DNA of 64,000 nucleotides, from the IMG/VR virus record IMGVR_UViG_3300032287_004484, positions 124,001 to 188,000 of that record. One strand, written 5' to 3'. A model generated the notes under the pieces. It saw only the letters and a program-made list of their open reading frames with translations. It was not told the origin of the DNA and did no database searches. Position numbers and translations under genes: made by a program. Positions 4,286-60,699 of this stretch are shown piece by piece (position 1 is the first letter of the stretch; every line of letters begins with the position of its first letter).

Positions 4286-4498
4286 ATGTTTATAAAAGAA
4301 ATGACTATTGGTGAAGCGTTAGAGGTTCATCCCGAAGTTGGAATGGTTTTATCTGCTTACCACCTCGGTGGATGTTCGCATTGTTCTGTAAATGAGGTAG
4401 AAACTATCGAGCAAGTTTGTGAAGGATATGGAGTTGATGTTGATGAATTATTATGCTCTATGAATTCACTATTAAATGAAGATGAACAATTAGATTAA
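4286..4498 (+). CDS. DUF1858 / hybrid-cluster-associated redox disulfide domain protein
   Basis: MTIGEALEVHPE, GCSHC, ETIEQVCEGYGVD; AAGGAG RBS. Confidence 0.85.
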   Translation: MFIKEMTIGEALEVHPEVGMVLSAYHLGGCSHCSVNEVETIEQVCEGYGVDVDELLCSMNSLLNEDEQLD

Positions 4499-5038
4499 AA
4501 TTTCTTTTAATTGTTTTATAGTATCTTTACTATTAAGGTGGAGAATTGATTTTCCACCTTTTTCTTTAAATTCATCACAATTAGATTTTAAATCATCAAT
4601 TAAAATAGAATTTGAGTTAGCATATAGTTTTTTATCACTTTTTTTATTAACAAAATTAATATGATCAGTATCTAAGTATTGTGAAACATTATTTTTTTCT
4701 AACCAATTCTTTTTTTGTTGACTAAAATCTTCATAATTTTCTTTTCTAGCCGTAGAAGATAAAATTCCTAATTTAAAATTATATTCCTTTTTTAATTCAA
4801 AAATATTTTCAATTAATGAATTTTCTTCTAATACATCTAAAGTTTCAAATAATTTTTCTTTTTTAATTAAATCCCAAATTTTTTGTTTTTGATCTTCAGT
4901 TAAATTATGTTTTTTGATAATTTCTTTTTTCATTTTTTCAAAATCAGCAAGTACACCATCCATATCTAAATAAATGATGTACTGATCTAATTTTTTACTT
5001 TCTAAAATAGTATCTAAATATTTTTTAAAGATTGACAT
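4490..5038 (-). CDS. HAD-family 5'(3')-deoxyribonucleotidase-like protein with N-terminal leader
   Basis: YLDMDGVLADF, ILSS, KKNWL, ILIDD motifs; starts MSIFKKYLDTILE. Confidence 0.85.
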   Translation of the reverse strand: MSIFKKYLDTILESKKLDQYIIYLDMDGVLADFEKMKKEIIKKHNLTEDQKQKIWDLIKKEKLFETLDVLEENSLIENIFELKKEYNFKLGILSSTARKENYEDFSQQKKNWLEKNNVSQYLDTDHINFVNKKSDKKLYANSNSILIDDLKSNCDEFKEKGGKSILHLNSKDTIKQLKEILI

Positions 5039-5041
5039 CTA

Positions 5042-5743
5042 TTAAGAAAACTGTGAATATATTTTTTTAAATTTTTGTATTTCTTTATCGTTTAAATTTA
5101 ATTCTTGTAATACTCCATCTTCATTATAACTATTTAAAATCTCTTCTATAGAAAAATTATAATTATTAACGTTATCATCAATTTCCATAATAAGATCTTC
5201 TGCATTATCCCATTTTTTTCCAATAACATTTACAATATATTTTATAGTTATTCTTGGATCTTTTAAAATAGAATTTTCTAACGATTTTTTAAAATCAGAT
5301 TCAATTTTTTTCTTATTCTCATAAAAAGAATATAAATAAGATAAAGATATACTATTAGATATATCACTTTTTTGTTCATCAGTTAATGCTTCTTTTTGTT
5401 TAGCTATTTTATCTATATTTTGTTCATTAATTTTACTATCAATTGTTTGACTATGCACCATTTGAATTTGTTTTAAATATTCTTTATAATCTTTATTGGA
5501 CAAAGTTTTTGTTTTATTTTTTTCTTTATCTTCGTCTTGTAATTTTTTTAAAGATTCTTCATCAGAAAGTGGTTCAGATTCTGGTTGATACGGTGTTGTT
5601 TCAATTCTATAATCTTTATCACGATATTGCCATCCTGGCTTAACGGTTGGTTTATTTGATCCGCCCCTAGGAGCTCTTATATCTCTAATTTTATCCCCAA
5701 CTGCTTCTTGAATTATCGTTAAATATTTATTAAATAGTGACAT
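5042..5743 (-). CDS. Hypothetical protein with N-terminal leader (putative internal head protein)
   Basis: Starts MSLFNKYLTIIQE. Confidence 0.7.
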   Translation of the reverse strand: MSLFNKYLTIIQEAVGDKIRDIRAPRGGSNKPTVKPGWQYRDKDYRIETTPYQPESEPLSDEESLKKLQDEDKEKNKTKTLSNKDYKEYLKQIQMVHSQTIDSKINEQNIDKIAKQKEALTDEQKSDISNSISLSYLYSFYENKKKIESDFKKSLENSILKDPRITIKYIVNVIGKKWDNAEDLIMEIDDNVNNYNFSIEEILNSYNEDGVLQELNLNDKEIQKFKKIYSQFS

Positions 5744-5804
5744 GCTTTTATCCTAATGATTTAATATAATATTTTTACAATAACTCCGTAAAAAATTCTT
5801 TTTT

Positions 5805-6545
5805 TTATGGAGTCCAATCACCGCCCATTCTTTTTTTAATAGCTTTAACATAATTACTAGCTTCTAATAAAGAATCATAATTACCGCAATCAAACCAAGA
5901 ACAATCTATTTCTACAATATTTAGACGATCCTCATCAGCATATAAATTAGATAGTTCAGCAATTTCTGTTTCTCCTCTTGAAGATGGTTTTAGTGAATTA
6001 ACTTTTTCTAAAACATCACTTGGATAATAATAAAAACCAGGAACAGCTAAATTACCAATGTATTCTTTTGGTTTTTCAACTATTCTTCGAGTGTCTTTAT
6101 GTATTACTCCATATTGAGAAGGATCAAAGACTCTTAATCCAGTGATCATTGCTTTATTTTGAGAAATAGATTCTTCTAATTCTTTTTTTATTTGATGAGT
6201 AAAATTAAAAAATAAATTATCGCCTAAAATAAGGATAGCTCCATCTCCTTTTAACCATTTCTTTTCTTCTACTATTTTAAAAGCATCTGGTAGTCCAGTG
6301 GGTGTATCTTGAATGAAATAACGATCTATATTAGAACTAAATACATCTCTAAAATCAGAAAAAAAATCATTTTTACAAATAAGAGAAATTCTTTCTACTC
6401 CTAAAGCTTTTAAAACTTGAAATGGATACCACACCATTGGTTGATCATATACTGGTAATAATTGTTTTGATGTGTATTTTGTAAAATTAGAAAGACGAGT
6501 GCCATTTCCGCCGGCTAAAATAATTGCTGATAAATTGTGTTCCAT
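5805..6545 (-). CDS. rmlA: Glucose-1-phosphate thymidylyltransferase
   Basis: LAGGNGTRL, SKQLLPVYDQPM, LGDN, VEKP, SSRGETEI, WFDCG. Confidence 0.9.
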   Translation of the reverse strand: MEHNLSAIILAGGNGTRLSNFTKYTSKQLLPVYDQPMVWYPFQVLKALGVERISLICKNDFFSDFRDVFSSNIDRYFIQDTPTGLPDAFKIVEEKKWLKGDGAILILGDNLFFNFTHQIKKELEESISQNKAMITGLRVFDPSQYGVIHKDTRRIVEKPKEYIGNLAVPGFYYYPSDVLEKVNSLKPSSRGETEIAELSNLYADEDRLNIVEIDCSWFDCGNYDSLLEASNYVKAIKKRMGGDWTP

Positions 6546-6590
6546 ATTATTAATATATTATTAAAAAAAAAATAATGTTTATTTTTATAT

Positions 6591-6601
6591 CATAAATATA
6601 T
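6591..6601 (+). promoter_or_regulatory. Putative T4-type late promoter CATAAATATAT
   Basis: Same 11-mer at 9150-9160(-) and 23489-23499(-); CTAAATATAT at 23933-23942(-) and 48127-48136(+); resembles T4 TATAAATA. Confidence 0.5.
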
Positions 6602-6625
6602 TTTATAAAAAATAAGGAGAAAAAA

Positions 6626-6835
6626 ATGTCTCAATTTAATAAATATCTAAATATAGTGCAAGAGGCATCTTATGCTGATACAGAAAAAGCTAATGATCCG
6701 AAGCGTTTTGAAGATACTAGGAAGGCTTCTAAAGATAAGCGAGGATTTGTTAGAAACCCTAATAGTGAAACTAATTCTCAAAAAATAGAAAGATTAAAAA
6801 AAGAAGAAGAAGAAAAGAAAAAACAAAGAAGATAA
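6626..6835 (+). CDS. Small charged protein with N-terminal leader (putative internal head protein)
   Basis: Starts MSQFNKYLNIVQE; AAGGAG RBS; CATAAATATAT upstream. Confidence 0.75.
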   Translation: MSQFNKYLNIVQEASYADTEKANDPKRFEDTRKASKDKRGFVRNPNSETNSQKIERLKKEEEEKKKQRR

Positions 6836-6837
6836 TA

Positions 6838-7836
6838 TTACATCCATTCTTTATTTTTAAGAGTCCAATCTACTAAATGTTTCAACCCTTCTTCAAAAGA
6901 GAAGGGTGGAATCCAGCCTAAAGATCTTAAAAGAGCATCATTAATTCCATATTTTCGATCATATCCAGGACGAACTTTAGAATCGTCAATGGTATCTATT
7001 GGATAAACATTTATATTCATTATATTAGCAATTTTTTGAATTAATTCTAAATTATTAATTGAATCATTACCAGCAACATTAAATTTAAGAGGAGTTTCAA
7101 GAAAATTTTTTTTCTCGTAAAAAACTGGATCTACTTTATTATCTATAAATATAAGAGCATCACTTAAATTTCTACAATCTAAATAAACTCTTGATCCTAC
7201 TTTTCCACCAGAAGTATATACTGGTATAGTTTTACCTTGACTAAGGTATGAAATTGTTTTAGGTATCATTTTTTCTGGATTCTGCCTCTTACCGAACATG
7301 TTCATGCAATGAATTATAATACTTGGTATTCTATATGTTCTCCAATAAGAAAAGATTATATTATCTTGAGCTGCTTTACTAGCACTATAAGGATTACTAG
7401 GGTGATACTCCCACCCTTCTCGATGGAGATCATCTCCAAAGACTTCTCCATAAACCTCATCAGTAGATAGATGAATAAATTTAGATGGATTTATTTTTCT
7501 TACAAAATCTAAAACGCTTAGTATTAATTGAACATTATTATTAATAATATCATCTGGAGATTCGACTGATGTTGCTACACTAGAATCACTAGCAATAGAA
7601 AATACAGTATCTATGTGTCCTATTTTAGAAATTAAAGTTTCACTAAATGGAACTCTTAAATCATGTCTAAAATTAGTATAATTAGGATGATTATTAAAAA
7701 TTAATCTTTGAGAATCACCTTTTCTAGTTAGTGAATCAATTCCTATAACTTGGTATCCTCTACTGAGGAGATCTTCAACTAAGTGATGTCCAACAAAACC
7801 AGAACTACCAGTAACTAAAACTTTTTTTATATCCAT
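6838..7836 (-). CDS. rmlB: dTDP-glucose 4,6-dehydratase
   Basis: GSSGFVG, STDEVYG, PSNPYSASK, QNPEKMIP, RPGYDRKY. Confidence 0.88.
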   Translation of the reverse strand: MDIKKVLVTGSSGFVGHHLVEDLLSRGYQVIGIDSLTRKGDSQRLIFNNHPNYTNFRHDLRVPFSETLISKIGHIDTVFSIASDSSVATSVESPDDIINNNVQLILSVLDFVRKINPSKFIHLSTDEVYGEVFGDDLHREGWEYHPSNPYSASKAAQDNIIFSYWRTYRIPSIIIHCMNMFGKRQNPEKMIPKTISYLSQGKTIPVYTSGGKVGSRVYLDCRNLSDALIFIDNKVDPVFYEKKNFLETPLKFNVAGNDSINNLELIQKIANIMNINVYPIDTIDDSKVRPGYDRKYGINDALLRSLGWIPPFSFEEGLKHLVDWTLKNKEWM

Positions 7837-7841
7837 ATTTA

Positions 7842-7904
7842 ATTATACTCAAAAAAGATAATTAATGTTTATAATTAAACATAAAAATAAAAAGTAAATA
7901 AAAT
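7842..7904. promoter_or_regulatory. Back-to-back divergent promoters of the TAAACA class
   Basis: Minus strand TAAACA(7871-7866)-N18-TATAAT-N5-ATG of rmlB; plus strand TAAACA(7876-7881)-N17-TAAAAT. Confidence 0.6.
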
Positions 7905-7912
7905 TACTATGT

Positions 7913-8419
7913 ATGAGTGAAAAAAGTTTTTTTGAAGAAATTATTATTGAGGAACATGGAGTGAGACCAGTTTATTTAATAGTGTTTTTCATATTTTGTG
8001 AGTCCATTATTGCTCTTACAAGTTATGTTACTTCACCAGTTGCAAGATTACATGTCGAACCTAATATAAGTTCAGAATCAATCGCTTTATCAAAAGGAAC
8101 TGTAGTTAATAAAATTGGTGAAAAGGATATGTTTATTAAAGTTACTACTGATGGAAAAGAAGGATATGTTAATAAACTATTTTTATCAGATAATCCGCCT
8201 TCTGGTAAAGTTTCTTTTTCATCAGATATTGATCAGTCTACATCTATTAAAGCTCGCGCTAGAGCATCTAATTTTACTCAAACAGCCGCTGCGAGAGGTT
8301 TTAGTGAATCTCAAATTCTAAGAACAAGAGGCGGTGCTAACGATTATGATATGGATTCTATTAGATGGTTAGAATCTATTAAAATAGATGAAGAAGAAAT
8401 TAAAAAATTTAATAACTAA
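7913..8419 (+). CDS. Secreted SH3-domain protein
   Basis: Hydrophobic signal-like segment (true start may be the GTG of VRPVYLIVFF), SH3b-like IKVTTDGKEGYV, ARARASNFTQTAAARG. Confidence 0.7.
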   Translation: MSEKSFFEEIIIEEHGVRPVYLIVFFIFCESIIALTSYVTSPVARLHVEPNISSESIALSKGTVVNKIGEKDMFIKVTTDGKEGYVNKLFLSDNPPSGKVSFSSDIDQSTSIKARARASNFTQTAAARGFSESQILRTRGGANDYDMDSIRWLESIKIDEEEIKKFNN

Positions 8420-9144
8420 ATTTGATCTTTAATTGATTCCATTTTAAAAGTTAAAAAAATATAAAAATCTTCAAAATTAAGAAAACGATCTGGATAAATA
8501 ATTTCTGAACAATTATAAGTTATTATTCTATTTAGATTAGCCATTCCTTTTTTATAAAAAACTATCACTGGAAAATTATTTTGAAAAACAAATTTTAGTA
8601 ATCCTTTTTTAAAGGGATTAGGTTTATCACTAAAAGATCTTTCTCCTTCTGGCATAAATCCTATATTACAGTATTTTAAATAATCTTCAGCCTCATCAAT
8701 AGATTCTTTAATTCTTACACCATCTTTTAAAAGAATCCCCGCTTTTTGAAGAAAAAAATAAAGAAGTCCACTACGGTACATCGCTTTATCAAAAAGAAAA
8801 GCACAATTACCTTCTAATGGATCAAAAGGATATTCAAATTCATTAACGTGATTAAATATTACTATATGTCCATTTTTAGGAATCATATTTTTTGGATATC
8901 TTCTATATATAAAAATTAAAAGAAAAATTCTACAAACTATATTCCAAATTTTTAAAAAGAAAAATAAAAACACTATATTTATCTTTTTAAAATCTTTTCT
9001 TTTTAAGAATGGTAATATCGATATAAAATATAAAAAACCTATTATTGTTCCACTTAAATAAACTACTAATGAATAATAAATTCTTTTTATTATTGAATCT
9101 TTTCTTGAATTTAAATTAGGTGAATCACCTTTATAAACGATCAT
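8416..9144 (-). CDS. PlsC-like lysophospholipid acyltransferase
   Basis: N-terminal TM segments, IFNH, MPEGERS, FKKG. Confidence 0.75.
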   Translation of the reverse strand: MIVYKGDSPNLNSRKDSIIKRIYYSLVVYLSGTIIGFLYFISILPFLKRKDFKKINIVFLFFFLKIWNIVCRIFLLIFIYRRYPKNMIPKNGHIVIFNHVNEFEYPFDPLEGNCAFLFDKAMYRSGLLYFFLQKAGILLKDGVRIKESIDEAEDYLKYCNIGFMPEGERSFSDKPNPFKKGLLKFVFQNNFPVIVFYKKGMANLNRIITYNCSEIIYPDRFLNFEDFYIFLTFKMESIKDQI

Positions 9145-9167
9145 ATAAAATATATTTATGTTTTTTT

Positions 9168-9722
9168 TTAATGATTATTCAAATATTCTTGTAATGATGG
9201 TGCATTTCTATCTTTATTAGAAATCGTTATTTCTCTTATATTAACTGGTGGCATTCTTTTAATAAAGACTTCACTCTGTAAAAGAGGAATACCATTTATT
9301 ATTCTTTCATTTTCGGGAACTCTTGGAGATGATACAGAATATAAAACTCTATTATCATTTTCAAGAGTAAAAAATCCATGAGCACAGCCTTCTGGTACAT
9401 ATACTGATTGTAGAGTCGAATCTGTTAAAAAAACGACTTCTGTTTCTAAATAAGATGGTGATCCTTTTCTAAGATCAATAAAAAAATCATAAATTGATCC
9501 TTTCATTACTGTCACCAATTTTGCTTGTGCAAAATTACCTTCTTGAAAGTGTAAACCTCTAAGAACATGTTTTTTAGATTGAGAAATATTTTGCTGAATA
9601 AAGTGTTTAAAGTATTTATCTTTAAAATCATCTTGTAGATATTCAGAGAAAAAGCCTCTATCATCTTCAAAACTTTTATGGTCTAATAAAAAAGAATCTT
9701 GAATTTTTAAGTTAGTTATCAT
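9168..9722 (-). CDS. rmlC: dTDP-4-dehydrorhamnose 3,5-epimerase
   Basis: FEDDRGFFSE, VLRGLHFQ, QAKLV, DLRKGSPSY, GCAHGF. Confidence 0.9.
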   Translation of the reverse strand: MITNLKIQDSFLLDHKSFEDDRGFFSEYLQDDFKDKYFKHFIQQNISQSKKHVLRGLHFQEGNFAQAKLVTVMKGSIYDFFIDLRKGSPSYLETEVVFLTDSTLQSVYVPEGCAHGFFTLENDNRVLYSVSSPRVPENERIINGIPLLQSEVFIKRMPPVNIREITISNKDRNAPSLQEYLNNH

Positions 9723-9788
9723 AGTTTATTATATTTTATAAATGTATTTATTTAAAAATAAATAATAAAAAATATAAAATATAATTAT

Positions 9789-10424: not shown

Positions 10425-10425
10425 T

Positions 10426-18575: not shown

Positions 18576-18884
18576 ATGAGTAAATTTAGAGATTATTTAG
18601 AAAAAATTAAAGTTGATTATAATTTAAATGATGTTGTAATTTCAGAGGCAAAAAAGAAAAAAAAGAAAAAAATGAAGCCAACTGAAAAATTAGAACCTGG
18701 CGATGTACTATATAAAGGTACAGGTACTTCTGCTGATAAGTTAGGTGTTGGTAAGGCTGCATATAGAAAATATTTTTTAAATATAAAAAATGGATTATTA
18801 GCTTCTGGAAAAAATGCTGGTAGTGCTATTGCTATTGCTTATTATTCTACTAATAAACATTTTAAAGACTTAGAAAAAAAATAA
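18576..18884 (+). CDS. Small basic protein with leader-like N-terminus
   Basis: Likely start MSKFRDYLEKI...VISE then AKKKKKKK; AIAIAY near C-terminus. Confidence 0.65.
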   Translation: MSKFRDYLEKIKVDYNLNDVVISEAKKKKKKKMKPTEKLEPGDVLYKGTGTSADKLGVGKAAYRKYFLNIKNGLLASGKNAGSAIAIAYYSTNKHFKDLEKK

Positions 18885-20273: not shown

Positions 20274-20720
20274 ATGGAAGATTTATACGAAGAGTTAGAA
20301 GAACTAAATTCTATCAAAAAGAAAAAAAAGAAACCGCGTGAAAAAAGGGTTCTTGAAGAAGATGAACAATTTAATGTTATCAGATATTTAAGAGATAAAC
20401 ATCCTGACGTTCTTTTTAGAGTTTCTATTGATGGAGTAAGATTACCTATTGGCATTTTAATGAAAATTAAAAAAAGCGGTGGTCTTCAAAAAGGATTACC
20501 AGATATTGAGATCTTTCATCCAAATAATGGTTATCATGGTCTTTTTATTGAAATGAAAAAGACTGGAAGAAAACTTAAAAAGAAAAATGGTGATTGGGTT
20601 GATGAGAAAATAGAACTACAGGCTTTAACAATTCAAAAATTAAATTCACTTGGATATTTAGCAGCTTTTGCTGATGGAGAAAAAGACGCAATTAAAATAA
20701 TTGATGATTATTTTAAGTAA
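20274..20720 (+). CDS. VRR-NUC domain nuclease
   Basis: EDEQ, KGLPDI, GLFIEMK, LNSLGY. Confidence 0.85.
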   Translation: MEDLYEELEELNSIKKKKKKPREKRVLEEDEQFNVIRYLRDKHPDVLFRVSIDGVRLPIGILMKIKKSGGLQKGLPDIEIFHPNNGYHGLFIEMKKTGRKLKKKNGDWVDEKIELQALTIQKLNSLGYLAAFADGEKDAIKIIDDYFK

Positions 20721-22041
20721 TTTCTTTTTTTAACATTTTAATAAAATTATCTTGCCTTATATTTTTAATAAAATTTCCAATTCTATTTAAAGAATAATCG
20801 ATTTTAGGTAATTTATATTCTATATCGTTTGTTTTTGTTTTTAAAATTGATGATGTTGCATAAATGGATCTTGAAATTAAATTAGTTAATTTCTCTGAAT
20901 CTTGCTGATTTAATTCAAATATTTTTTGATCGTCTTTAAAATTAGTAAATATTTTTAAAAAAACTGGATAATCTTTGAAATGTTCTTTAAAATCTTTAAA
21001 AGTAGTATTTTCATTAAAAGTGTCAGAACTCTTTAGTAAATCAATAAAATCTCGTTTATAATCTTTTGTATAAAATCTATTTTCCATTTTATTTAATGCC
21101 AAATATAAAGGTTTTATTATATAATTAATTTCTTTATCTTTTATTTTAACATTGTTTTTTATTTTTAAAATAATATATTTTATTTCTTTTTCAGAAAAAC
21201 CTTCAAAGTCATTATATAATATAATTTCTTTTATTTTTTCTTTTATTTTTTTTTCAAAATTATTATCATCTTTAAAGATTTCATTTATTTCAAGAATAGA
21301 AAAATCTACATTATTTATAATAAAATTATCTATTTTAAAATCAAAATTATAGTGATTACCTAATAAAGCATATAGTTCTCTTAAAATTTCTTCTGGAGAA
21401 TATGTTTTAGCATCTTTAGAATTATTTTTACTATCTTTATCACTTTTTAATGGCATATATAGTAATTTGCTTTCTTTATCTTTTGCTTGAAATTTATAAA
21501 TATCTTTATTATCTAAAATTGTATGTAAATTAAAATCATGTAAAAAAGTTAATAAACCGTTACTTACATTATCTTTATTAATAACTAAAGAAAATAATTC
21601 ATGGTTAGAATTTTCATTATAAATAGAAAATGATATTTTTCTTAAAATTTGATAATTAATTAAATTAATAAAATCATTAGAATTTATTTTTTCTTTATTA
21701 TTTTCGTATATTTTTTTAAATTTTTCAACTAAAATATATTTTAGATCTTTTAAAGTAATTTCATTTAAAAAATATTTATCAAAATCTGAAACGTCAAAGA
21801 TTAGTGATAATTTATTATTATCATTAAAATAATTAATAATGGGATTATTTATTTTTATGTAAAAATCCGTATGTTTTTCTTTATATATTTCTTTTAATAT
21901 TTCATTAATATAATCAACAGATTTTTTAAATATTTCTATAACCTGTATAGGTGTTTTATCACTTATATTAAAATTATATTTAACGTTTTGATATGAACCT
22001 ATTCCTTCAATAATTATTGAAAGATTTTTTATAAATTTCAT
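20713..22041 (-). CDS. Hypothetical protein with leader-like N-terminus
   Basis: 442 aa ORF, starts MKFIKNLSIIIE. Confidence 0.6.
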   Translation of the reverse strand: MKFIKNLSIIIEGIGSYQNVKYNFNISDKTPIQVIEIFKKSVDYINEILKEIYKEKHTDFYIKINNPIINYFNDNNKLSLIFDVSDFDKYFLNEITLKDLKYILVEKFKKIYENNKEKINSNDFINLINYQILRKISFSIYNENSNHELFSLVINKDNVSNGLLTFLHDFNLHTILDNKDIYKFQAKDKESKLLYMPLKSDKDSKNNSKDAKTYSPEEILRELYALLGNHYNFDFKIDNFIINNVDFSILEINEIFKDDNNFEKKIKEKIKEIILYNDFEGFSEKEIKYIILKIKNNVKIKDKEINYIIKPLYLALNKMENRFYTKDYKRDFIDLLKSSDTFNENTTFKDFKEHFKDYPVFLKIFTNFKDDQKIFELNQQDSEKLTNLISRSIYATSSILKTKTNDIEYKLPKIDYSLNRIGNFIKNIRQDNFIKMLKKEIT

Positions 22042-22874: not shown

Positions 22875-23468
22875 CTAATTAATTAATTTTATAGTTATAA
22901 TGCAATCTTTATCGACACTAATTATAAAACCTTTATACTGCGTTTTTTTTATTTTATCAAATCTTTTTTGATTTTTATCGTTAAAATCGTCATATTTTAT
23001 TTTTGAAGAAAAATTTGATTCTACTAATTCTATAATATTTTTAAAAATTATTTTAAAATTTTTATTAATCATTGCTTGTCTATAAGATAAAGTTTTTTCA
23101 TATCCTTCTTTATCTTTAAAAAAATTAGGCGATTTTTTTACTATTATATTTGCGCCAAAAGTATTAAAAAACTCAACAAATTTTACTTGCTCTTCATCTC
23201 CTTTTATATACATTTCACCATCAGTTAAAAGATATAACGATTTTAAATCTATTCTTTTATATGAATTATCTTTTATTTTAATTTTTGTTCTTGCTGAAAC
23301 AAGCGATTTTTTTATGCCTATTTTTTCTCCTAAATCCTCAAGTTTTCCTACTACTTCTGCTCCTATTTCTTGAACTGCTGCTTTAGCAAGTCTATATCCT
23401 TTCCAAGCTTCATCATAATTTTGTTTTTCTTCTTGAATTATTTCTAAATAATCATAAAAATTTTTCAT
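22875..23468 (-). CDS. Hypothetical protein with N-terminal leader (putative internal head protein)
   Basis: Starts MKNFYDYLEIIQE; GAGG RBS; CATAAATATAT upstream. Confidence 0.75.
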   Translation of the reverse strand: MKNFYDYLEIIQEEKQNYDEAWKGYRLAKAAVQEIGAEVVGKLEDLGEKIGIKKSLVSARTKIKIKDNSYKRIDLKSLYLLTDGEMYIKGDEEQVKFVEFFNTFGANIIVKKSPNFFKDKEGYEKTLSYRQAMINKNFKIIFKNIIELVESNFSSKIKYDDFNDKNQKRFDKIKKTQYKGFIISVDKDCIITIKLIN

Positions 23469-23527: not shown

Positions 23528-23929
23528 TTAAAAAAATATATTATCCCATTCTTTAGGTAATAAGGATATATCTATTTTTCTAACTTTAATTGGTAAATTA
23601 TTTAATTTAGCTTTTTTTAATCTATGATGTCCATCTATAATTATTTTTTCTCCAGTAGAATCTTTAGTTATAATTATTATTGGATAATCTAAATCAGAAG
23701 CTTCTACTCTTAGTAAAGTATCTTCATCTGTTTTTTCACTATGAATAGAATTATATTTTTCAGACGGTTCTTCTATTATAGGAATGTTATTTTCTTTTAG
23801 TTTTTTTTGTATATCAGACATTGTAACTTGATTAATTTCATCTGACCAGTATTCATCTATAAGATTAGGATTTTTTATTAAAGATGTAGCATCATTAATA
23901 ATTTTTAAATATTCATATAGTTTAATCAC
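23528..23929 (-). CDS. ParB/Srx N-terminal-domain protein with leader-like N-terminus
   Basis: SDLDYPIII, IIDGHHRL; GTG start, MIKLYEYLKIIND. Confidence 0.75.
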   Translation of the reverse strand: MIKLYEYLKIINDATSLIKNPNLIDEYWSDEINQVTMSDIQKKLKENNIPIIEEPSEKYNSIHSEKTDEDTLLRVEASDLDYPIIIITKDSTGEKIIIDGHHRLKKAKLNNLPIKVRKIDISLLPKEWDNIFF

Positions 23930-24036: not shown

Positions 24037-24285
24037 ATGAAAAATTTTCATGATTATCTAGAAATAATTCAAGAAAAAACTGCGAATATTCCAAGCAGAG
24101 GATCAGAGGATCATCTTAAGATGATCGCACAAAAAATTTATAATATGGTTAAATCTGATGGAATGGCTACATGGAATTCAACTTCAAGATCAGAAGTATA
24201 TGATAATAAAAAATACTATGGAGTACAAAAGTTATCGGAAGATCAGATAATTGAAGTTTTAGGTATGGTTGATAAAATGTTTTAA
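24037..24285 (+). CDS. Small protein with N-terminal leader (putative internal head protein)
   Basis: Starts MKNFHDYLEIIQE; GAGG RBS. Confidence 0.75.
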   Translation: MKNFHDYLEIIQEKTANIPSRGSEDHLKMIAQKIYNMVKSDGMATWNSTSRSEVYDNKKYYGVQKLSEDQIIEVLGMVDKMF

Positions 24286-24722: not shown

Positions 24723-24793
24723 AATTATAATAAATATATTAAAGTTATATTATAAATGTTTAAAAAATAATAATATAACTTTATTAATTTATT

Positions 24794-54604: not shown

Positions 54605-54605
54605 G

Positions 54606-55322
54606 ATGCCTGATAGTATTATAAAAGCAGATAATATAACTTCTCTTAGTGGAGGTGGTATAGGTTTTCCTGATGGAAGCGCAGCTAATCCATCACTAAA
54701 ATTTACTAATGATGGAGATACGGGATTATATAGAATAGGAAGCAATACTATTGGTATAGCAAGTAATGGAAGTAAAGTAGGTGAAATAGGTGCTGATTAT
54801 GGAGCTTTTAAAGGTAATGTAGTTCAATGTAGAGTTACAAGATATGATATACAAACATCTGGTTCAACAGGTAGTGGAGTGGATGGAGTAGAATTAACTG
54901 GAATGAGAGTATCTATTACTCCTAAATTTGCTAGTAGTATGATTCTTTGTCAATTTCAAGTTCATTTAGAACTGAACAGTGCTGATTGGGATGCAATGTT
55001 TACTGTTTATAGAAATGGTGCGGTACCAACTGGGGTTTATGCGGGTTTTAATACAGTTGTAGGTAATGCTAATTGGAGCGGATTAAGTATAACATCTTAC
55101 TATGATTCAACAAATAATGCTGATTCTACTCCAAATACACAATCTTTTATGTATCACGATTTTCCTAATACTACTAATACATTAACTTATGCTCCAGGAA
55201 TTAAAACAAGTTCTCCTAGCGCAGCTAAAACTTTTTATATAAATAGAACAGTCAGTAGTCTTGGAGCAAGTTCTTATGAAGCTGGCGTTTGTTTTTCTAC
55301 TGTTTGGGAGATTGCACAATGA
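54606..55322 (+). CDS. Short fibre tip / receptor-binding protein
   Basis: GSAANPSLKF..DGDTGLY, ITPKFASS, HDFPNTT, WEIAQ. Confidence 0.75.
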   Translation: MPDSIIKADNITSLSGGGIGFPDGSAANPSLKFTNDGDTGLYRIGSNTIGIASNGSKVGEIGADYGAFKGNVVQCRVTRYDIQTSGSTGSGVDGVELTGMRVSITPKFASSMILCQFQVHLELNSADWDAMFTVYRNGAVPTGVYAGFNTVVGNANWSGLSITSYYDSTNNADSTPNTQSFMYHDFPNTTNTLTYAPGIKTSSPSAAKTFYINRTVSSLGASSYEAGVCFSTVWEIAQ

Positions 55323-55871
55323 TACGAAAACCTAGTATTACAGATGCTATTATAAGTTTAAGACCAAATAGTGCTTTTATTTTAGAAAGTGACGATATAT
55401 CTCGATTAGAATGGAAAGATAATAATACTATTTCTCCAACCTTAGAAGAAATACAAAATGAATTAAATAGATTACAACAAGATTTTTATAATATAGAATA
55501 TAAAAATTTAAGAGAAAAAGAATACCCTAATATTAAAAATCAATTAGATATTTTGTATCACCAAGGATATGATGGGTGGAAAAAAGTAATTCAAGAAATA
55601 AAGGATAAATATCCTAAAAATGGAAATATTTAATGAATAAATTAATTAATTTTATTGAAAATCTAGTATTTCTTAATAAACCACAAACGATATGGAAGGA
55701 GTCATAAATTGATTATAAGTGGTGATACAATTCAACCATCTATTGGAACTAATATAACTGTTCCTAGTGGATTAGGTATAAATGTTGGAAGTACTAAAAT
55801 AGGTGAAATAGGTGCTGATTATGGAGCTTTTAAAGGTAATGTAGTTCAATGTAGAGTTACAAGATATGATA
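54778..55871 (+). repeat. 72 bp exact direct repeat (54778-54849 and 55800-55871) in duplicated fibre-tip cassettes
   Basis: TAGGTGAAATAGGTGCTGATTATGG...GATATGATA identical in both copies. Confidence 0.9.
55319..55633 (+). CDS. Fibre assembly chaperone (XkdW-like)
   Basis: AIISLRP, REKEYP..QLDILYH..W...IKDKYPK; ATGA overlap start. Confidence 0.75.
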   Translation: MIRKPSITDAIISLRPNSAFILESDDISRLEWKDNNTISPTLEEIQNELNRLQQDFYNIEYKNLREKEYPNIKNQLDILYHQGYDGWKKVIQEIKDKYPKNGNI

Positions 55872-56341
55872 CACAAGTAAGTCTTACAACTGGTACTGGT
55901 GTTAGTGGAATCGAAATAACTGGGATGCAAGTTTCTATAACTCCTAAATTTATAAATAGTATGATAATTTGTCAATTTCAGATTCATGGAGAAGGTTCAA
56001 GCGGAGAGCATAATTTAATGTTTAATGTTTATCGAAACGGAAGTATACCAACAGGTACTTATTCTGCCTTTAATACAGTTGCTGGAAATAATATTTGGTC
56101 TGGAGTGTCAATGGCCACTATATATGATTCTGCTCAAAATAGTGATTCAACTCCTACTACTCAAACTTTTTTTTATCATGATTTTCCAAATACTAATTCT
56201 AATTTGATATATTCTCCAGGAGTAAAATCTACGGATGGCACAAGTAGAACTTTTGTTGTAAATCGTTCCATAGGAAGTTTAGGAGGATCAGCTTCTGAAG
56301 TTGGGATTAGTTATTCTATGGTTTGGGAGATTGCTCAATGA
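55709..56341 (+). CDS. Short fibre tip / receptor-binding protein (paralog of 54606-55322)
   Basis: TTG start with AAGGAG RBS; high similarity to 54606 protein. Confidence 0.75.
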   Translation: MIISGDTIQPSIGTNITVPSGLGINVGSTKIGEIGADYGAFKGNVVQCRVTRYDTQVSLTTGTGVSGIEITGMQVSITPKFINSMIICQFQIHGEGSSGEHNLMFNVYRNGSIPTGTYSAFNTVAGNNIWSGVSMATIYDSAQNSDSTPTTQTFFYHDFPNTNSNLIYSPGVKSTDGTSRTFVVNRSIGSLGGSASEVGISYSMVWEIAQ

Positions 56342-56655
56342 AAAATAAACCTTTACTATCAGATGCAATAATTAAAATTAGACCTAATAGTGCTTTTATT
56401 TTAGAAAACGAAGATCTTTCAAGATTAGAATGGAAAGATAACTCTATTTCTCCTCCTAATGTTGATGAAATAAATTTTGAATATTCAAAACTTTTACAAG
56501 AATATGAATCTTATGATTATTGGAGAAATAGAAAAAAAGAATATCCTAAAATAGAAGATCAGTTAGATATTCTTTATCACCAAGGATATGATGGTTGGAA
56601 AAAAATAATCCAAGAAATAAAAGATAAATATCCTAAAAATGGAGATACTAAGTGA
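56338..56655 (+). CDS. Fibre assembly chaperone (paralog of 55319-55633)
   Basis: Near-identical QLDILYHQGYDGWKK.IQEIKDKYPKNG. Confidence 0.75.
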   Translation: MKNKPLLSDAIIKIRPNSAFILENEDLSRLEWKDNSISPPNVDEINFEYSKLLQEYESYDYWRNRKKEYPKIEDQLDILYHQGYDGWKKIIQEIKDKYPKNGDTK

Positions 56656-57722
56656 GTAAATTATATGTAGATCAAATACTTCCTAGTACCACAAATAATG
56701 TTTCTTTTGTACAAGGTGGAACTTCTAATTTTATATCACCTTCTTTTGTTGGTGAATTAAAATCATTTAGGATTAGAAGAACTACTTCTGTCGCTTTTCC
56801 TTTTTGGAATTTATCTCTACCAGACCAAACATTATCAGCAGGAACTTATCCTGATTATGTTGAATATCTCCGAAGTATAAAAATAGAAACATGTAATCCT
56901 ACATTATTGACAGGTAACGTATCTACAAGTGGGAACTCTACTACTATAACCTTTGCTTCTTCTCAAACTTTAACAGCAGGTAGTTTATTATATTTTCATT
57001 CTTCAGCTCAATTTAGAATTATTCTTTCTGGAAGCACAACATCTTATGTAGTAGATGAACCTATTACTTTATCGAGTCAAGCCGTATCTTTAATAGATCA
57101 ATCAACATACAGTTCTATTTTTTCAGGTGCTTGGAGTACTACGGCTTTTACCTTAACTGACAATGCTCAAAATAAAATTCTATTAGATGCTTTGACCGAA
57201 GATGCTTACTATACTGGTGCAAGTATTTCTAGTAATGTAATAACGCCAATTAATACTACTAACTGGTTAATTCTTAGATGGGGAACTACTGATATTAATA
57301 TAACAAGTTTTAATCCTACAACAAGAGTACTAAATATTGCTTCTGGTTCTCCTAGTGGCACTACAATAGAATTATATCCACATCGTATTTCAGGTTCTAT
57401 AAATGCTTATCATAAACAAGTTGAAGATTCTGTACTAATTAATAATGGAATACAAGTAGTAAATGGTTTAAGATTGAGGGATAGATTTCAAGGACATAGA
57501 CATCAAGCCTTTGGTAGTTCTAGTACGGGAACTAGGTCTACATTAGCCGACAATATCTCTTATGTAGGTTTTGATCCAGGAGGGACTACGGGGCAATCTA
57601 ATGGTATGGTTTTAAATCCATCTACGGATACAGTAAACGGAACGCCAAGAACGGGACAATTTACTAGACCTAGAGGACTTGGGGTAATTTTCTATGAGTA
57701 TATGGGAAGGGTAACAGCATGA
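56652..57722 (+). CDS. Tail fibre protein with collar-like and HxH tip motifs
   Basis: VGEL, RDRFQGHRH, GTPRTGQFTRPR. Confidence 0.75.
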   Translation: MSKLYVDQILPSTTNNVSFVQGGTSNFISPSFVGELKSFRIRRTTSVAFPFWNLSLPDQTLSAGTYPDYVEYLRSIKIETCNPTLLTGNVSTSGNSTTITFASSQTLTAGSLLYFHSSAQFRIILSGSTTSYVVDEPITLSSQAVSLIDQSTYSSIFSGAWSTTAFTLTDNAQNKILLDALTEDAYYTGASISSNVITPINTTNWLILRWGTTDINITSFNPTTRVLNIASGSPSGTTIELYPHRISGSINAYHKQVEDSVLINNGIQVVNGLRLRDRFQGHRHQAFGSSSTGTRSTLADNISYVGFDPGGTTGQSNGMVLNPSTDTVNGTPRTGQFTRPRGLGVIFYEYMGRVTA

Positions 57723-58159
57723 GCCTTACAAAAATAACAAGTACAGTAATAAATACTTTAAGTTCTTTTTTTAGTATTAATAGTAGTACAGGAGCAATAA
57801 CTACAAATGTTCCTGATTTAATTGGAAGTAATACAACACTATATCCTTCTTTTGCATGTAGAGCATGGGTAAATTTTAATGGAGTTCCATCTACTCCTAC
57901 AATTCGAGCAAGTGGAAATGTATTGAGCGTTACAAAGACTGCTGATGGCGATTATACCGTAAATTTTATAACTCCTATGCCCGATGCGAATTATTGTATA
58001 TTTTCAACAGGTCACCAAGTGGATGCAGATGGCACATTTATTTCTTTTAGCGTTCTTTCAAGAAGTACAACAGGGTATAGAATAAGATGTGGACATTATG
58101 ATAGTGGGCAATATAGTCTTAGAAATTGTGATTATGTAGGTACTGGAGTATTTAGATGA
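57719..58159 (+). CDS. Short fibre tip protein
   Basis: CRAWVNFNG...IRASGNV.SV...GDYTVNF..PMPDANY. Confidence 0.75.
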   Translation: MSLTKITSTVINTLSSFFSINSSTGAITTNVPDLIGSNTTLYPSFACRAWVNFNGVPSTPTIRASGNVLSVTKTADGDYTVNFITPMPDANYCIFSTGHQVDADGTFISFSVLSRSTTGYRIRCGHYDSGQYSLRNCDYVGTGVFR

Positions 58160-58558: not shown

Positions 58559-58657
58559 AAAGATTCTCCATAAATAAGCATTTAGTATAATTTCTATATA
58601 ATATACAAGAAGTGTACCAAGGTTAAATTTTTTTTAAAAAATAGAACTATAAAAAAA

Positions 58658-58687
58658 TAAACATTAGAACATAATTTCAAATATAAT
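58658..58687 (+). promoter_or_regulatory. TAAACA-N18-TATAAT promoter, probably leaderless
   Basis: -10 box ends 5 nt before ATG 58693; no SD. Confidence 0.6.
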
Positions 58688-58692
58688 AAAAT

Positions 58693-59106: not shown

Positions 59107-59390
59107 ATAAGAAAGATTTAATTGTTGCTTTATGTAAAAAGAATGATTTTGATTTTATCGAACCAGAATTTTTAGATATAACTAAAAATGAATATTTTCA
59201 AATGGTTTTTGCTTCGCCAGATGAAGAGAAGATTAACAGTATGAATGATGTTAATAAATTTGTTAATTTTATTGAAATGATAATAGATGAATCAGAGAAA
59301 ATTTATAAAAAGAAATTTAATGATCGTATCTTTATGATAAAAGATTCACTCCTCGTCTTTGGTGAGTGGAAAGAATTAGAGAAGGTTTGA
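59103..59390 (+). CDS. Hypothetical protein
   Basis: ATGA overlap with GAGG RBS. Confidence 0.65.
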   Translation: MNKKDLIVALCKKNDFDFIEPEFLDITKNEYFQMVFASPDEEKINSMNDVNKFVNFIEMIIDESEKIYKKKFNDRIFMIKDSLLVFGEWKELEKV

Positions 59391-59391
59391 T

Positions 59392-60213
59392 ATGCCAGAA
59401 GCACCAGAAATAAAGATGTATACTGATTTTTTAAATTATATCTCTGAAAAATCGTCTTGTGTTGGAATCCAAAAAATGCCTCAATCTAAAAATAAAGATA
59501 TATCTTTTTCTGTTTTAGATCCAGAATTAGGTATTCCATCACTTAAGTTACGATTTGAAAGTAAAGGTAAAGAAATAGGTGCTAATTTTTTACACGAAAA
59601 CGGATCATTGTATAAAAGGTATCTTTTTCAAATGGGAATGAGTGGTTATTGGTTATTATGTGACGAACCATCTTTTCATAAAAATATTAAAATTAAAAAC
59701 AATACCGTTTTAAGATTTTTAATATATTCTGAACTTACAGATATTCATGGTTTTTTATGTTTAGTAGATACGAGAAGATTTGCTAAATGGAGCGAGGTTA
59801 CTCCAGATAAATGGGGTAATAATCGAGGTCCAGATCCTTTTTATGAGAGAGATCAATTTAAAGAGAATATTCTTTTTTCATTACATCAAAAAGATTTTGG
59901 AAAACCAATTTATGAAACTCTAATGAATCAAAAATATTTTAATGGAATTGGAAATTATCTAAGAGCAGTGATATGCGGAAGAATAGATGAAACACCTTTT
60001 CAATCAGCTCGTGATTATATTAAAAAAGATCCAGATTTATTTTTTGATACAATATGGCAAGTTATAGATGAATCTTACGATATGCAGATTAAAAATGCTA
60101 CTCCTTCTAATTGGTATAGTCCTTATGACGATAAAAAGGAAAAAAACTTAGAAGATTCAAATGGACGAAGATTTTGGTACAAGAAAAAGTGGGATCCAGA
60201 TAAAAATAAATAA
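59392..60213 (+). CDS. nei: Fpg/Nei DNA glycosylase, NEIL1-like (zincless finger)
   Basis: N-terminal MPEAPE, SKGKE, GMSG, DTRRF, H2TH LMNQKYFNGIGNYLRA, DSNGRRFWY with no Cys4 finger. Confidence 0.85.
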   Translation: MPEAPEIKMYTDFLNYISEKSSCVGIQKMPQSKNKDISFSVLDPELGIPSLKLRFESKGKEIGANFLHENGSLYKRYLFQMGMSGYWLLCDEPSFHKNIKIKNNTVLRFLIYSELTDIHGFLCLVDTRRFAKWSEVTPDKWGNNRGPDPFYERDQFKENILFSLHQKDFGKPIYETLMNQKYFNGIGNYLRAVICGRIDETPFQSARDYIKKDPDLFFDTIWQVIDESYDMQIKNATPSNWYSPYDDKKEKNLEDSNGRRFWYKKKWDPDKNK

Positions 60214-60225
60214 AAGGAGTTTTAA

Positions 60226-60699
60226 ATGTTAAAAGACTTTAAGTTTTATTTGGAGATGGTAGAAATCAATAAGGATATAGTTTTAAGCAAAATTAGTGAA
60301 ATCAATTCTTTTAAACAAGGAATCAAAAAAGAAGATATTAATTCTGAGAACTTTACTTTCTCTTATTTCCCTGAAAGGGACTTTAATCCTGTAATTTATA
60401 CTAATACTGAAGGTACTACAAATTTTTATGTTCCTACACTAGATGACTTATCAGAAAAAATAAAATCAGAAAAATTATTTGCTAATAACAACACTTTATC
60501 TTATACGATTGAGTATATGGAAGACGGCGCTATTATTAAAAAATCTTTTGGGACAGAAGAATATGGTGGAGAAAGAGAAGAAGGAATGGAACACGAAAAG
60601 AAAATAGTATCTTCATCTGAAACTAAAAAAATAGATAAATTTGGTGAAAAATATGAAAAACAATTCACTATTATGGCAACTTCTGAATTAAAATATTAA
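60226..60699 (+). CDS. Hypothetical protein with leader-like N-terminus
   Basis: Starts MLKDFKFYLEMVE; AAGGAG RBS. Confidence 0.7.
   Translation: MLKDFKFYLEMVEINKDIVLSKISEINSFKQGIKKEDINSENFTFSYFPERDFNPVIYTNTEGTTNFYVPTLDDLSEKIKSEKLFANNNTLSYTIEYMEDGAIIKKSFGTEEYGGEREEGMEHEKKIVSSSETKKIDKFGEKYEKQFTIMATSELKY

What the first reader, a model, noticed from the sequence alone, without database searches (positions are those of the whole stretch)
4490..60699. Shared N-terminal 'address tag' on many unrelated proteins: a putative capsid-targeting, protease-cleaved leader
Seen: MSIFKKYLDTILE (5038-), MSLFNKYLTIIQE (5743-), MSQFNKYLNIVQE (6626+), MKNFYDYLEIIQE (23468-), MKNFHDYLEIIQE (24037+). Looser copies: MIKLYEYLKIIND (23929-), MSKFRDYLEKI..VISE (18576+), MLKDFKFYLEMVE (60226+), MKFIKNLSIIIE (22041-) and the scaffold-like MMEYKSYKKIQE (61389+). 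Similarity stops right after the Glu, and the genes are scattered on both strands. Established: T4 internal proteins carry a ~10 aa capsid targeting sequence (MKTYQEFIAE type) removed by gp21 after (I/L)-x-E, and a gp21 homolog is in this window. Inference: this is a distinct 13-residue packaging signal marking a large set of proteins for encapsidation and injection, and possibly a portable cargo-loading tag.
Basis: partly seen in the sequence, partly recalled or inferred. Interest (0 to 1): 0.85.

Follow-up and report, generated by a model that had tools for sequence, protein, structure and literature searches.

The report
Capsid-targeting leader peptide on phage proteins
Five (probably six to eight) otherwise unrelated proteins of an uncultivated 290-kb T4-like phage start with the same 13-residue peptide. 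It is best read as a three-residue-longer version of the known T4 'capsid targeting sequence', which loads proteins into the phage head and is then cut off by the head protease, so the feature is real but not a new kind of thing.

Summary
The shared N-terminal peptide is real. Five genes (starts 5038-, 5743-, 6626+, 23468-, 24037+) begin with M-[S/K]-x-F-x-[K/D]-Y-L-x-x-[I/V]-x-E, against 0.04 expected from dinucleotide shuffles. Upstream DNA and the protein after Glu13 are unrelated.

A model trained only on leaders from related phages scores all five, and also 18576+, above every internal position. Starts 23929- and 60226+ are marginal. Starts 22041- and 61389+ are at chance level.

The window is part of a 26%-GC, ~290-kb T4-like phage with a gp21-family (S77) protease and a gp23 capsid protein.

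The leader matches the T4 IPII/IPIII capsid targeting sequence in register. It has aromatic residues at positions 4 and 7 (the T4 targeting determinants) and an I/V-x-E processing motif three residues further along than in T4.

- Orthologues keep the leader almost unchanged while the rest falls to 31-51% identity.
- Near-identical orthologues of the HAD phosphatase lack the leader.
- Syntenic slots hold different cargo in different genomes.
- Two metagenome contigs found only through the leader pattern encode a gp21 homologue next to the tagged gene.

Verdict: a new member of the known T4-type leader system. Packaging and cleavage are inferred, not shown.

The parts
4490..5038 (-). Tagged gene, 182 aa. 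A 13-residue leader (codons at 5000-5038) sits on a complete HAD / 5'(3')-deoxyribonucleotidase-like domain.
   Evidence: Pfam NT5C and phrog_2643 align from residue 19-20 on. In the AF2 model the leader is a separate N-terminal helix (residues 3-17, pLDDT 71-75) on a confident HAD core. The best PDB matches are 3bwv and 1q92. Orthologues 82-95% identical lack the leader, and a 44% orthologue keeps it.
5042..5743 (-). Tagged gene, 233 aa, no known family. Leader codons at 5705-5743.
   Evidence: No Pfam or PHROG hit. Only two homologues were found among 5.8 billion proteins. In the alignment with these two and the L039 orthologue (94, 51 and 31% identity), residues 1-14 are invariant except position 5.
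6626..6835 (+). Tagged gene, 69 aa. The mature part would be 56 aa and basic (pI 9.8). Leader codons at 6626-6664, with V at P3.
   Evidence: It occupies the slot between the RmlB-like and RmlA-like genes, which holds different tagged cargo in L039 and L040.
22875..23468 (-). Tagged gene, 197 aa, an ORFan. The mature part is basic (pI 9.4). Leader codons at 23430-23468.
   Evidence: No homologue other than itself. The single-sequence AF2 model is unusable (pLDDT 42).
24037..24285 (+). Tagged gene, 82 aa. Its leader is 12/13 identical to that of 23468-, and the rest is unrelated. Leader codons at 24037-24075.
18576..18884 (+). Probable sixth member, 102 aa. The targeting half of the leader (residues 1-11) is intact. 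The candidate cleavage site is V-I-S-E24|A. The mature part is very basic (pI 9.8).
   Evidence: It scores 15.9 bits with the independent PSSM, above the null maximum of 11.1. It is picked up by the 7-residue 'targeting-half' regex.
23528..23929 (-). Possible member, 133 aa, a ParB/Srx-like small domain (phrog_17560). The leader-like N-terminus has Asp instead of Glu at position 13. L-I-D-E26 lies directly before the conserved domain start at W28.
   Evidence: Marginal scores. Homologues of this domain often carry short N-terminal extensions ending in [ILVM]-x-E just before the domain: 29 of 54, against 13.6±3.1 in shuffles. A 72% identical orthologue has no leader.
60226..60699 (+). Possible but weak member, 157 aa, acidic, in the head-gene module. 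Its N-terminus resembles the 12-residue variant only after a one-residue shift, and P3 is Met.
   Evidence: BLOSUM score 27 at offset 1, against a null 99.99th percentile of 29. It does not score in register.
62573..63226 (+). Prohead protease, gp21 family (Peptidase_S77). This is the presumed processing enzyme.
   Evidence: Pfam PF03420, E = 9e-20. It is 31% identical to T4 gp21, with the GE.xHP and G.SSR motifs conserved and an L-S-E8 near the N-terminus like T4 L-I-E9. The best cultured relative is 33% identical.
61389..62573 (+). 394-aa acidic protein directly upstream of the protease. It is not a member of the leader family, and its function is unknown.
   Evidence: Its N-terminus scores at chance level. 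No family hit. No similarity to T4 gp22, gp67 or gp68.
20713..22041 (-). It is not a member.
   Evidence: Its N-terminus is not above the null distribution.

Best explanation
The 13-residue N-terminus is a capsid targeting sequence of the T4 type, borne by a set of fast-evolving 'internal' proteins.

Proposed steps, all inferred:
1. The leader forms a short amphipathic helix. Its aromatic residues at positions 4 and 7 dock the protein onto the scaffolding core while the prohead assembles.
2. The gp21-family protease (62573-63226) cuts after Glu13, with P3 = Ile or Val. The free propeptide leaves the head.
3. The mature proteins stay with the packaged DNA and enter the host with it.

The mature proteins are small basic proteins, an HAD phosphatase or nucleotidase, possibly a ParB/Srx-like protein, and ORFans.

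The leader is modular. It is gained, lost and re-used on different cargo genes in plastic regions of the genome.

Shown here: the motif, its statistics, its conservation and modularity, its register match to the T4 signal, and its genomic link to gp21 homologues. Targeting, cleavage and injection themselves are inferred.
For: 1. Non-random and N-terminus-specific: 5 observed against 0.04 or 0.002 expected. The independent PSSM scores are above every internal position.

2. Selection acts on the peptide, not on the DNA. Leu8 uses four codons and Ile11 three, and upstream DNA is unrelated.

3. The leader is conserved far more than the cargo. Residues 1-14 are almost invariant in orthologues that are 51% and 31% identical overall. 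The leader is 9/13 identical on a 44% orthologue.

4. Modularity:
- HAD orthologues 82-95% identical start directly at the domain, and in L040 the upstream DNA is the end of the neighbouring gene.
- 18 tagged proteins from three genomes fall into at least 12 unrelated groups.
- One syntenic slot carries different cargo in each genome.

5. Register match to T4. IPII/IPIII start M-K-T-Y-Q-E-F-I-A-E|A. The T4 literature places targeting at residues 4 and 7 and processing at residues 8 and 10, with the gp21 motif L/I-x-E (PMC9026906). Here F4, Y7, L8 and E13 are invariant in 13 of 13 leaders, though F4/Y7/L8 were fixed by the search pattern for the seven found by the DNA scan, and residue 11 is I or V. 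One 7-residue regex picks exactly IPI, IPII and IPIII in 32 kb of T4, and exactly the five strict copies plus 18576 in the window.

6. The machinery is present: an S77 protease with catalytic motifs and a gp23 capsid protein with L-I-S-E61|S just before the conserved mature N-terminus, where T4 has F-L-T-E65|A. A 375-aa acidic protein lies upstream of the capsid gene with 4.8 [IL]-x-E per 100 aa, against 1.15 for the proteome and 5.9 for T4 gp22.

7. Independent genomic link. Two 1.3-kb metagenome contigs found only through the leader DNA pattern encode a gp21 homologue directly beside the tagged gene. One of them also carries a T4-type 10-residue leader. A T4-like contig with gp44/gp45 homologues has a tandem cluster mixing 10- and 13-residue leaders.
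Against: - There are no virion proteomes and no N-terminal data, because the phage is uncultivated.
- The cargo has no similarity to known internal proteins.
- The scaffold was identified only by position and composition.
- P1' is variable (A, S, E, K, G, T, M, L), whereas the known T4 sites read here are E|A or E|S.
- The loose pattern M..F..YL..[IVM].E also starts housekeeping-like proteins of low-GC organisms in metagenomes (575-, 932- and ~490-aa ORFs). The pattern alone is therefore not diagnostic.
- An HAD nucleotidase is an unusual thing to package, and its close relatives do without the leader.
- No enrichment of [IL]-x-E at positions 10-15 exists beyond the strict family.
Confidence: 0.72

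Rival explanations
1. The shared N-terminal helix is a functional peptide with a purpose other than head loading. It could be a common docking site for a phage or host partner, a localisation signal, or a degron that times protein turnover.
For: Conservation and modularity show only that the peptide is functional, not what it does. The tagged genes lie among metabolic genes rather than head genes. An enzyme cargo (HAD) fits a cytoplasmic role.
Against: - The register match to the experimentally defined T4 CTS determinants, and the invariant Glu with I/V at P3.
- T4 ip genes also lie outside the head cluster.
- Leader genes sit next to gp21 homologues in other phages.
- The peptide has no signal-peptide-like hydrophobic core.
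Confidence: 0.13
2. The leader targets proteins into the prohead but is not removed at Glu13. The proteins would be packaged uncleaved, or cut elsewhere.
For: - P1' residues such as E, K, M and L differ from the T4 sites.
- 23929- has Asp at position 13. In T4, Asp at P1 blocks processing but not targeting.
- 18576+ lacks Glu13 and has its first I-x-E at residue 24.
Against: Glu13 is invariant in 13 of 13 leaders and residue 11 is always I or V. Similarity ends exactly at Glu13. The same phage's capsid protein has an I-x-E at the expected maturation site.
Confidence: 0.1
3. The resemblance is a compositional or chance effect of AT-rich N-termini (a generic amphipathic start), or a nucleic-acid element such as a translation-initiation region or recombination cassette, rather than a peptide signal.
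For: - The genome is 26% GC.
- The loose pattern begins unrelated housekeeping-like proteins in low-GC metagenome contigs.
- The looser copies 22041-, 61389+ and 11796+ are at chance level.
- A 39-nt shared stretch could also promote gene shuffling.
Against: For the strict set there are 5 copies against 0.04 or 0.002 expected. Synonymous codons vary while residues stay fixed. Upstream DNA is unrelated. The leader is near-invariant in orthologues whose remainder is 31-51% identical.
Confidence: 0.04

Closest known systems
Capsid targeting sequence (CTS) of phage T4 internal proteins IPI, IPII and IPIII, processed by gp21
   Same: - An N-terminal leader of 10-19 residues is shared by otherwise unrelated, fast-evolving proteins.
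- Aromatic residues sit at positions 4 and 7.
- The leader ends in [I/L]-x-E.
- A gp21-family protease and a gp23 capsid protein are in the same genome.
- The genes lie in plastic regions outside the head cluster.
- Several cargoes are small and basic.
   Different: - The leader is 13 residues rather than 10, with three extra residues between the targeting half and the I-x-E.
- Position 2 is often Ser, and P3 can be Val.
- P1' is variable.
- The cargo has no sequence similarity to T4 IPs.
- The cargo includes an HAD nucleotidase-like enzyme.
- The host phage is a ~290-kb, 26%-GC uncultivated lineage whose protease is only 31% identical to gp21.
- There is no experimental evidence.
Other gp21-processed T4 head proteins (gp23, gp24, gp67, gp68, Alt, gp21 itself)
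   Same: N-terminal propeptides are removed after L/I-x-E. The window phage's capsid protein and protease carry such motifs at the corresponding places.
   Different: Those propeptides differ from each other in sequence. Here one near-identical peptide is re-used on many proteins.
Propeptides of inner-body and ejection proteins of giant phages phiKZ, 201phi2-1 and SPN3US, cut by gp175/gp245
   Same: This is a jumbo phage. A distant gp21 homologue cuts after Glu, and propeptides are thought to target proteins into the head. Paralogues can share identical N-termini.
   Different: Those propeptides are mostly 80 to more than 100 residues long with an S/A-x-E motif. The phages are not T4-like in their capsid genes. 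Here the leader is short and T4-like.
Cargo-loading peptides of encapsulins, and scaffold-fusion loading of P22 capsids (from general knowledge, not tested here)
   Same: A short portable peptide is enough to load foreign cargo into an HK97-fold shell.
   Different: Those peptides are C-terminal, unrelated in sequence and not removed by a maturation protease.

Membership tests
T4-type capsid targeting sequence / internal-protein system | The same short N-terminal peptide is borne by proteins that are otherwise unrelated. | tested here: met
   There are five strict copies. Mature parts show no significant similarity. At least 12 unrelated cargo groups exist across three genomes.
T4-type capsid targeting sequence / internal-protein system | Targeting determinants: aromatic residues at positions 4 and 7 of the leader (defined on IPIII). 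| tested here: met
   F4 and Y7 are invariant in 13 of 13 leaders from the window and relatives. For the seven leaders found by the DNA pattern (five window, L022, L026) this was imposed by the pattern; the six from L039 and L040, found by homology, are the independent test. The T4 determinants are taken from PMC9026906. One regex finds only IPI-III in 32 kb of T4 and only the tagged genes in the window.
T4-type capsid targeting sequence / internal-protein system | The leader ends in the gp21 cleavage motif L/I-x-E. | tested here: met
   I-x-E13 is present in four window copies and V-x-E13 in one. E13 is invariant in 13 of 13 leaders. The motif lies three residues further from the start than in T4.
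T4-type capsid targeting sequence / internal-protein system | A gp21-family (Peptidase_S77) prohead protease with catalytic His and Ser is in the same genome. | tested here: met
   PF03420 at E = 9e-20. Both motifs are conserved in the alignment with T4 gp21.
T4-type capsid targeting sequence / internal-protein system | A gp22-like scaffolding core to which the leader binds. | tested here: inconclusive
   The candidate is a 375-aa acidic protein upstream of the capsid gene (L002:13932-15059), rich in [IL]-x-E. It has no detectable similarity to gp22.
T4-type capsid targeting sequence / internal-protein system | The proteins are present in the virion, with the leader removed after Glu. | not testable with these tools
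   The phage is known only from metagenome contigs. No proteome is available.
T4-type capsid targeting sequence / internal-protein system | The leader is sufficient to load a foreign protein (portability). | not testable with these tools
   There is only indirect support. The same enzyme occurs with and without the leader at 82-95% identity.
T4 internal proteins IPI/IPII/IPIII (as protein families) | Sequence similarity of the mature protein to IPI, IPII or IPIII. | tested here: not met
   There are no PHROG or Pfam hits to internal virion proteins. phmmer against T4 IPs finds nothing (head-module proteins only). The cargo proteins are therefore not members of those families; only the leader system is shared.

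The most novel reading that the evidence does not exclude
The leader may be one dialect of a length-polymorphic (10, 12 or 13 residues) address code used across many environmental T4-like phages. If so, the injected proteome could be read directly from a genome sequence. Enzymes such as an HAD 5'-nucleotidase and a small ParB/Srx-like domain would then be recurrent pre-packaged effectors, swapped in and out by leader-mediated recombination, perhaps for immediate counter-defence or host takeover. The ParB/Srx-like family shows many different clade-specific leaders ending in [ILVM]-x-E.
Probability: 0.3. Interest if true: 0.6.

Novelty: new member of a known kind. Interest (0 to 1): 0.42.

Why it matters
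If the reading is right, the T4 capsid-targeting mechanism extends to a very distant, uncultivated jumbo branch of the T4 superfamily.

- It would give a simple sequence rule for predicting which proteins such phages inject: aromatic residues at positions 4 and 7, then [I/V]-x-E at 10-13.
- The tagged ORFans become candidates for early-acting counter-defence or takeover proteins.
- The presence or absence of the leader on nearly identical enzymes is a natural experiment on how cargo is recruited.
- The practical value as a portable loading tag is modest, because the T4 CTS already serves that purpose.

Tried and rejected
- A DNA search of the head region against cultured phages found nothing. 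The phage has no close cultured relative; the best protease match is 33% identical.
- Pfam and PHROGs gave no family for four of the five strict cargoes. Large-database searches found only 0-2 homologues for 5743- and 23468-, so cargo function could not be assigned. The single-sequence AF2 model of 23468- was unusable.
- A general test for [IL]-x-E enrichment at residues 10-15 of all N-termini showed nothing beyond the strict family. I therefore did not extend the family to proteins that merely have I-x-E near the start (22041-, 61389+, and p656, p92 and r266 outside the window).
- 11796+ resembles the leader's first half, but it is a SAM methyltransferase without Glu13. I treated it as chance.
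- A T4-late-promoter-like motif (CATAAATATA) lies upstream of three tagged genes, but the evidence is too weak in this AT-rich DNA.
- The search for related loci with the protease returned only one distant relative, which has no leaders in its head region.
- The metagenome-wide pattern scan could not serve as a cargo catalogue, because many hits are out-of-frame or housekeeping-like N-termini. One apparent co-occurrence with a protease (L018) was a chance out-of-frame hit 10 kb away.
- Only gp21 and gp23 homologues are detectable by sequence in the head module.
- A full census of the 290-kb genome with loose criteria was not possible. Only 20 kb beyond the window was fetched, and it yielded one extra weak candidate.

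Full report
**What the window is**

The 64-kb window is 26.4% GC. It is identical to part of two ~290-kb metagenome contigs, one of them filed in IMG/VR as a viral genome. It encodes a Peptidase_S77 (T4 gp21 family) prohead protease at 62573-63226. Ten kb further on, outside the window, lies a gp23-family major capsid protein.

A terminase and a T4 baseplate protein lie to the left of the window, and a gp13-like protein to the right. The closest cultured phage protease is only 33% identical, and DNA searches find nothing. The source is therefore an uncultivated, jumbo, distantly T4-like myovirus.

**Check of the observation**

Five genes (5038-, 5743-, 6626+, 23468-, 24037+) start with M-[S/K]-x-F-x-[K/D]-Y-L-x-x-[I/V]-x-E.
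- A regex for this at residue 1 hits 5 of 81 genes.
- 300 dinucleotide shuffles of the window give a mean of 0.037 and a maximum of 1. 20000 residue shuffles of the real N-termini give a mean of 0.002.
- In real reading frames the core motif occurs only at residue 7 of these five. The one exception is inside an Fpg-like protein and is a chance hit.

To avoid circularity I trained a PSSM only on leaders found in other phages.
- The five window copies score 19.6-35.7 bits. The maximum over 17831 internal positions is 11.1 bits.
- 18576+ scores 15.9 bits, so it is supported.
- 23929- scores 2.1 bits, which is marginal.
- 22041- and 61389+ are at chance level.
- 60226+ aligns only with indels.

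Similarity begins at the ATG and ends at codon 13. Upstream DNA is unrelated and the mature parts show no significant similarity. Conserved residues use several synonymous codons, four for Leu8 and three for Ile11. Selection therefore acts on the peptide.

The strict DNA pattern occurs only these five times in the whole 290-kb genome. The strict genes form two small clusters. One lies among dTDP-sugar pathway genes and one next to dCMP deaminase, thioredoxin and ribonucleotide reductase.

**Comparative evidence that the peptide is a functional, modular unit**

*Conservation.* In orthologues of the 233-aa protein that are 94%, 51% and 31% identical overall, residues 1-14 are invariant except position 5. 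The sequence right after them is scrambled. A 44% identical orthologue of the HAD enzyme, in another jumbo phage, keeps 9 of 13 leader residues.

*Gain and loss.* Five cluster representatives 82-95% identical to the HAD enzyme start a few residues before the catalytic DMDGV motif, with no leader. In contig L040 the DNA upstream is the end of the neighbouring nucleotidyltransferase gene, so this is not a gene-calling artefact. More distant family members also start directly at the domain.

The AF2 model, built on an alignment of 34 sequences, shows the leader as a separate N-terminal helix. Its pLDDT is 71-75, on a 93-98 pLDDT HAD core. The fold matches deoxyribonucleotidase-like structures.

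*Re-use.* The syntenic 20 kb of the related phage (L039) carries about eight tagged genes, including three paralogues with a 12-residue variant. L040 carries two more. Eighteen tagged proteins from the three genomes fall into at least a dozen unrelated groups. The slot between the RmlB-like and RmlA-like genes holds different cargo in each genome. Two of the window's cargoes have essentially no homologues in 5.8 billion proteins.

**Comparison with the T4 signal**

Read from the T4 record, IPII and IPIII begin M-K-T-Y-Q-E-F-I-A-E|A, and IPI begins M-K-T-F-K-E-F. According to the review PMC9026906:
- the first ten residues of IPIII suffice for encapsidation;
- targeting depends mainly on residues 4 and 7, and processing on residues 8 and 10;
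- Asp at P1 blocks processing but not targeting;
- gp21 cuts after L/I-x-E.

In the window's leader, residues 4 and 7 are invariant aromatics, and residues 11 and 13 are I/V and E. This is the same layout with three extra residues between the two halves.

A single 7-residue regex for the targeting half finds exactly IPI, IPII and IPIII among 281 ATG-ORF starts in 32 kb of T4. It finds exactly the five strict copies plus 18576+ among 331 starts in the window.

Other presumed substrates fit this specificity.
- The capsid protein has L-I-S-E61|S just before the conserved mature N-terminus, where T4 has F-L-T-E65|A.
- The protease has L-S-E8 where T4 gp21 has L-I-E9.
- A 375-aa acidic protein directly upstream of the capsid gene has 4.8 [IL]-x-E per 100 residues. 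The proteome has 1.15 and T4 gp22 has 5.9. This is a better scaffold candidate than 61389+.

**Independent link to the head protease**

Scans of IMG/VR and of metagenome contigs with the leader's DNA pattern returned much noise. This included housekeeping-like proteins of low-GC organisms that start with the loose pattern, so the pattern alone is not diagnostic.

The scans also returned two 1.3-kb contigs in which the tagged gene lies directly beside a gp21 homologue (28% and 37% identical). In one of them the gene on the other side of the protease carries a 10-residue T4-type leader.

A T4-like contig with gp44 and gp45 homologues has a tandem cluster that mixes 10- and 13-residue leaders. 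The 13-residue form is therefore a length variant of the classical signal, not a separate invention.

**Interpretation**

The best explanation is a T4-type capsid targeting sequence. The leader helix docks cargo onto the scaffolding core, the S77 protease removes it after Glu13, and the mature proteins travel with the DNA. Confidence is about 0.7.

What is shown:
- the motif and its statistics;
- peptide-level selection and modularity;
- the register match with the T4 determinants;
- the presence of the protease;
- the genomic association with gp21 homologues.

What is inferred: binding to the core, cleavage at Glu13, presence in virions and injection.

Caveats:
- P1' is more variable than at the T4 sites.
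- 23929- has Asp at position 13 and 18576+ has its first I-x-E at residue 24. If these two are real members, they may be cut elsewhere or not at all.
- Packaging of an HAD nucleotidase is unusual.

The literature already notes that T-even phages carry diverse proteins with CTS-like sequences, and that the CTS may be a general way for T4-like phages to load proteins (PMC9026906; PMC3012670). I found no description of it in such a distant jumbo lineage.

**Verdict**

The claims 'distinct', 'many' and the two weakest copies are not upheld. It is a new member of a known kind, of moderate interest.

Noticed in passing
window 23528-23929 (-) and its homologues P0042-P0175: This small ParB/Srx-like domain (phrog_17560, DGHHR motif) is a recurrent bearer of short N-terminal extensions in many phages. 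13 of 68 short homologues start at the domain. 54 have extensions of at least 12 residues, and 29 of these end in [ILVM]-x-E within 12 residues of the domain start (shuffle mean 13.6, maximum 25 of 5000). Several distinct leader types are seen, including a T4-like 10-mer and an 'L-I-x-E-A-Y' type. A 72% identical orthologue has no leader.
   Followed up: partly
window 4490-6835 compared with L039:7338-13324 and L040:2430-4786: The region between the RmlB-like gene, the RmlA-like gene and DUF1858 is hyperplastic. The two adjacent tagged genes (HAD enzyme and 233-aa protein) are in swapped order in L039. The slot upstream of the RmlA-like gene holds a 69-aa, a 206-aa, or two (134- and 109-aa) unrelated tagged genes in the three genomes.
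   Followed up: partly
upstream of window genes 6626+, 23468-, 23929- and 8416-9144(-): A shared CATAAATATA lies 15-66 nt upstream of the start and resembles the T4 late promoter TATAAATA. ATAAATAT lies within 80 nt upstream of 11 genes, against 2.3 expected if uniform, but intergenic AT-richness makes this inconclusive.
   Followed up: partly
L163:13921-14082 (+), about 4 kb to the left of the window in the same genome: A 53-aa ORF starts with a 10-residue T4-type pattern (aromatic at positions 4 and 7, V-K-E10) but has Leu at position 2. It may be a further tagged gene outside the window.
   Followed up: no
window 60812-61264 (+): An HSP20/alpha-crystallin small heat-shock protein gene lies inside the head-morphogenesis module, two genes upstream of the prohead protease.
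   Followed up: no
window 59392-60213 (+): A weak Fpg/Nei-type DNA glycosylase (H2TH domain below the Pfam cut-off, N-terminus M-P-E-x-P-E) lies in the head module. It contains the only in-frame non-N-terminal match to the leader core, which is a chance match.
   Followed up: partly
window 53583-58159 (+), and 37887-39863 / 48157-49737 (+): A second kind of shared N-terminus lies within the finding's range. Five consecutive fibre-like genes begin with related Ser/Thr/Gly-rich N-termini, most separated by small ORFs whose starts also resemble each other. Two large genes (658 and 526 aa) share their first ~30 residues. These are probably common attachment domains of multiple tail fibres.
   Followed up: no
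window 251-13727 and 24294-26979: The phage carries a large sugar-nucleotide and glycosylation gene set: two epimerase/dehydratases, an RmlA-like gene, an RmlC-like gene, an acyltransferase, a glycosyltransferase, an HAD-nucleotidyltransferase fusion and a methyltransferase. It also has dCMP deaminase, thioredoxin and a class II-like ribonucleotide reductase.
   Followed up: partly
L002:16775-19888 (outside the window, right of the capsid gene): A GIY-YIG homing endonuclease lies directly after the major capsid gene, as segD does in T4. A di-haem cytochrome c peroxidase (CCP_MauG) gene, unusual for a phage, follows.
   Followed up: no
metagenome loci L052, L060, L050 and similar: The loose pattern M..F..YL..[IVM].E also starts long housekeeping-like ORFs (about 575, 932 and 490 aa) in low-GC contigs. 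Motif-only scans for such leaders will therefore give false positives.
   Followed up: partly
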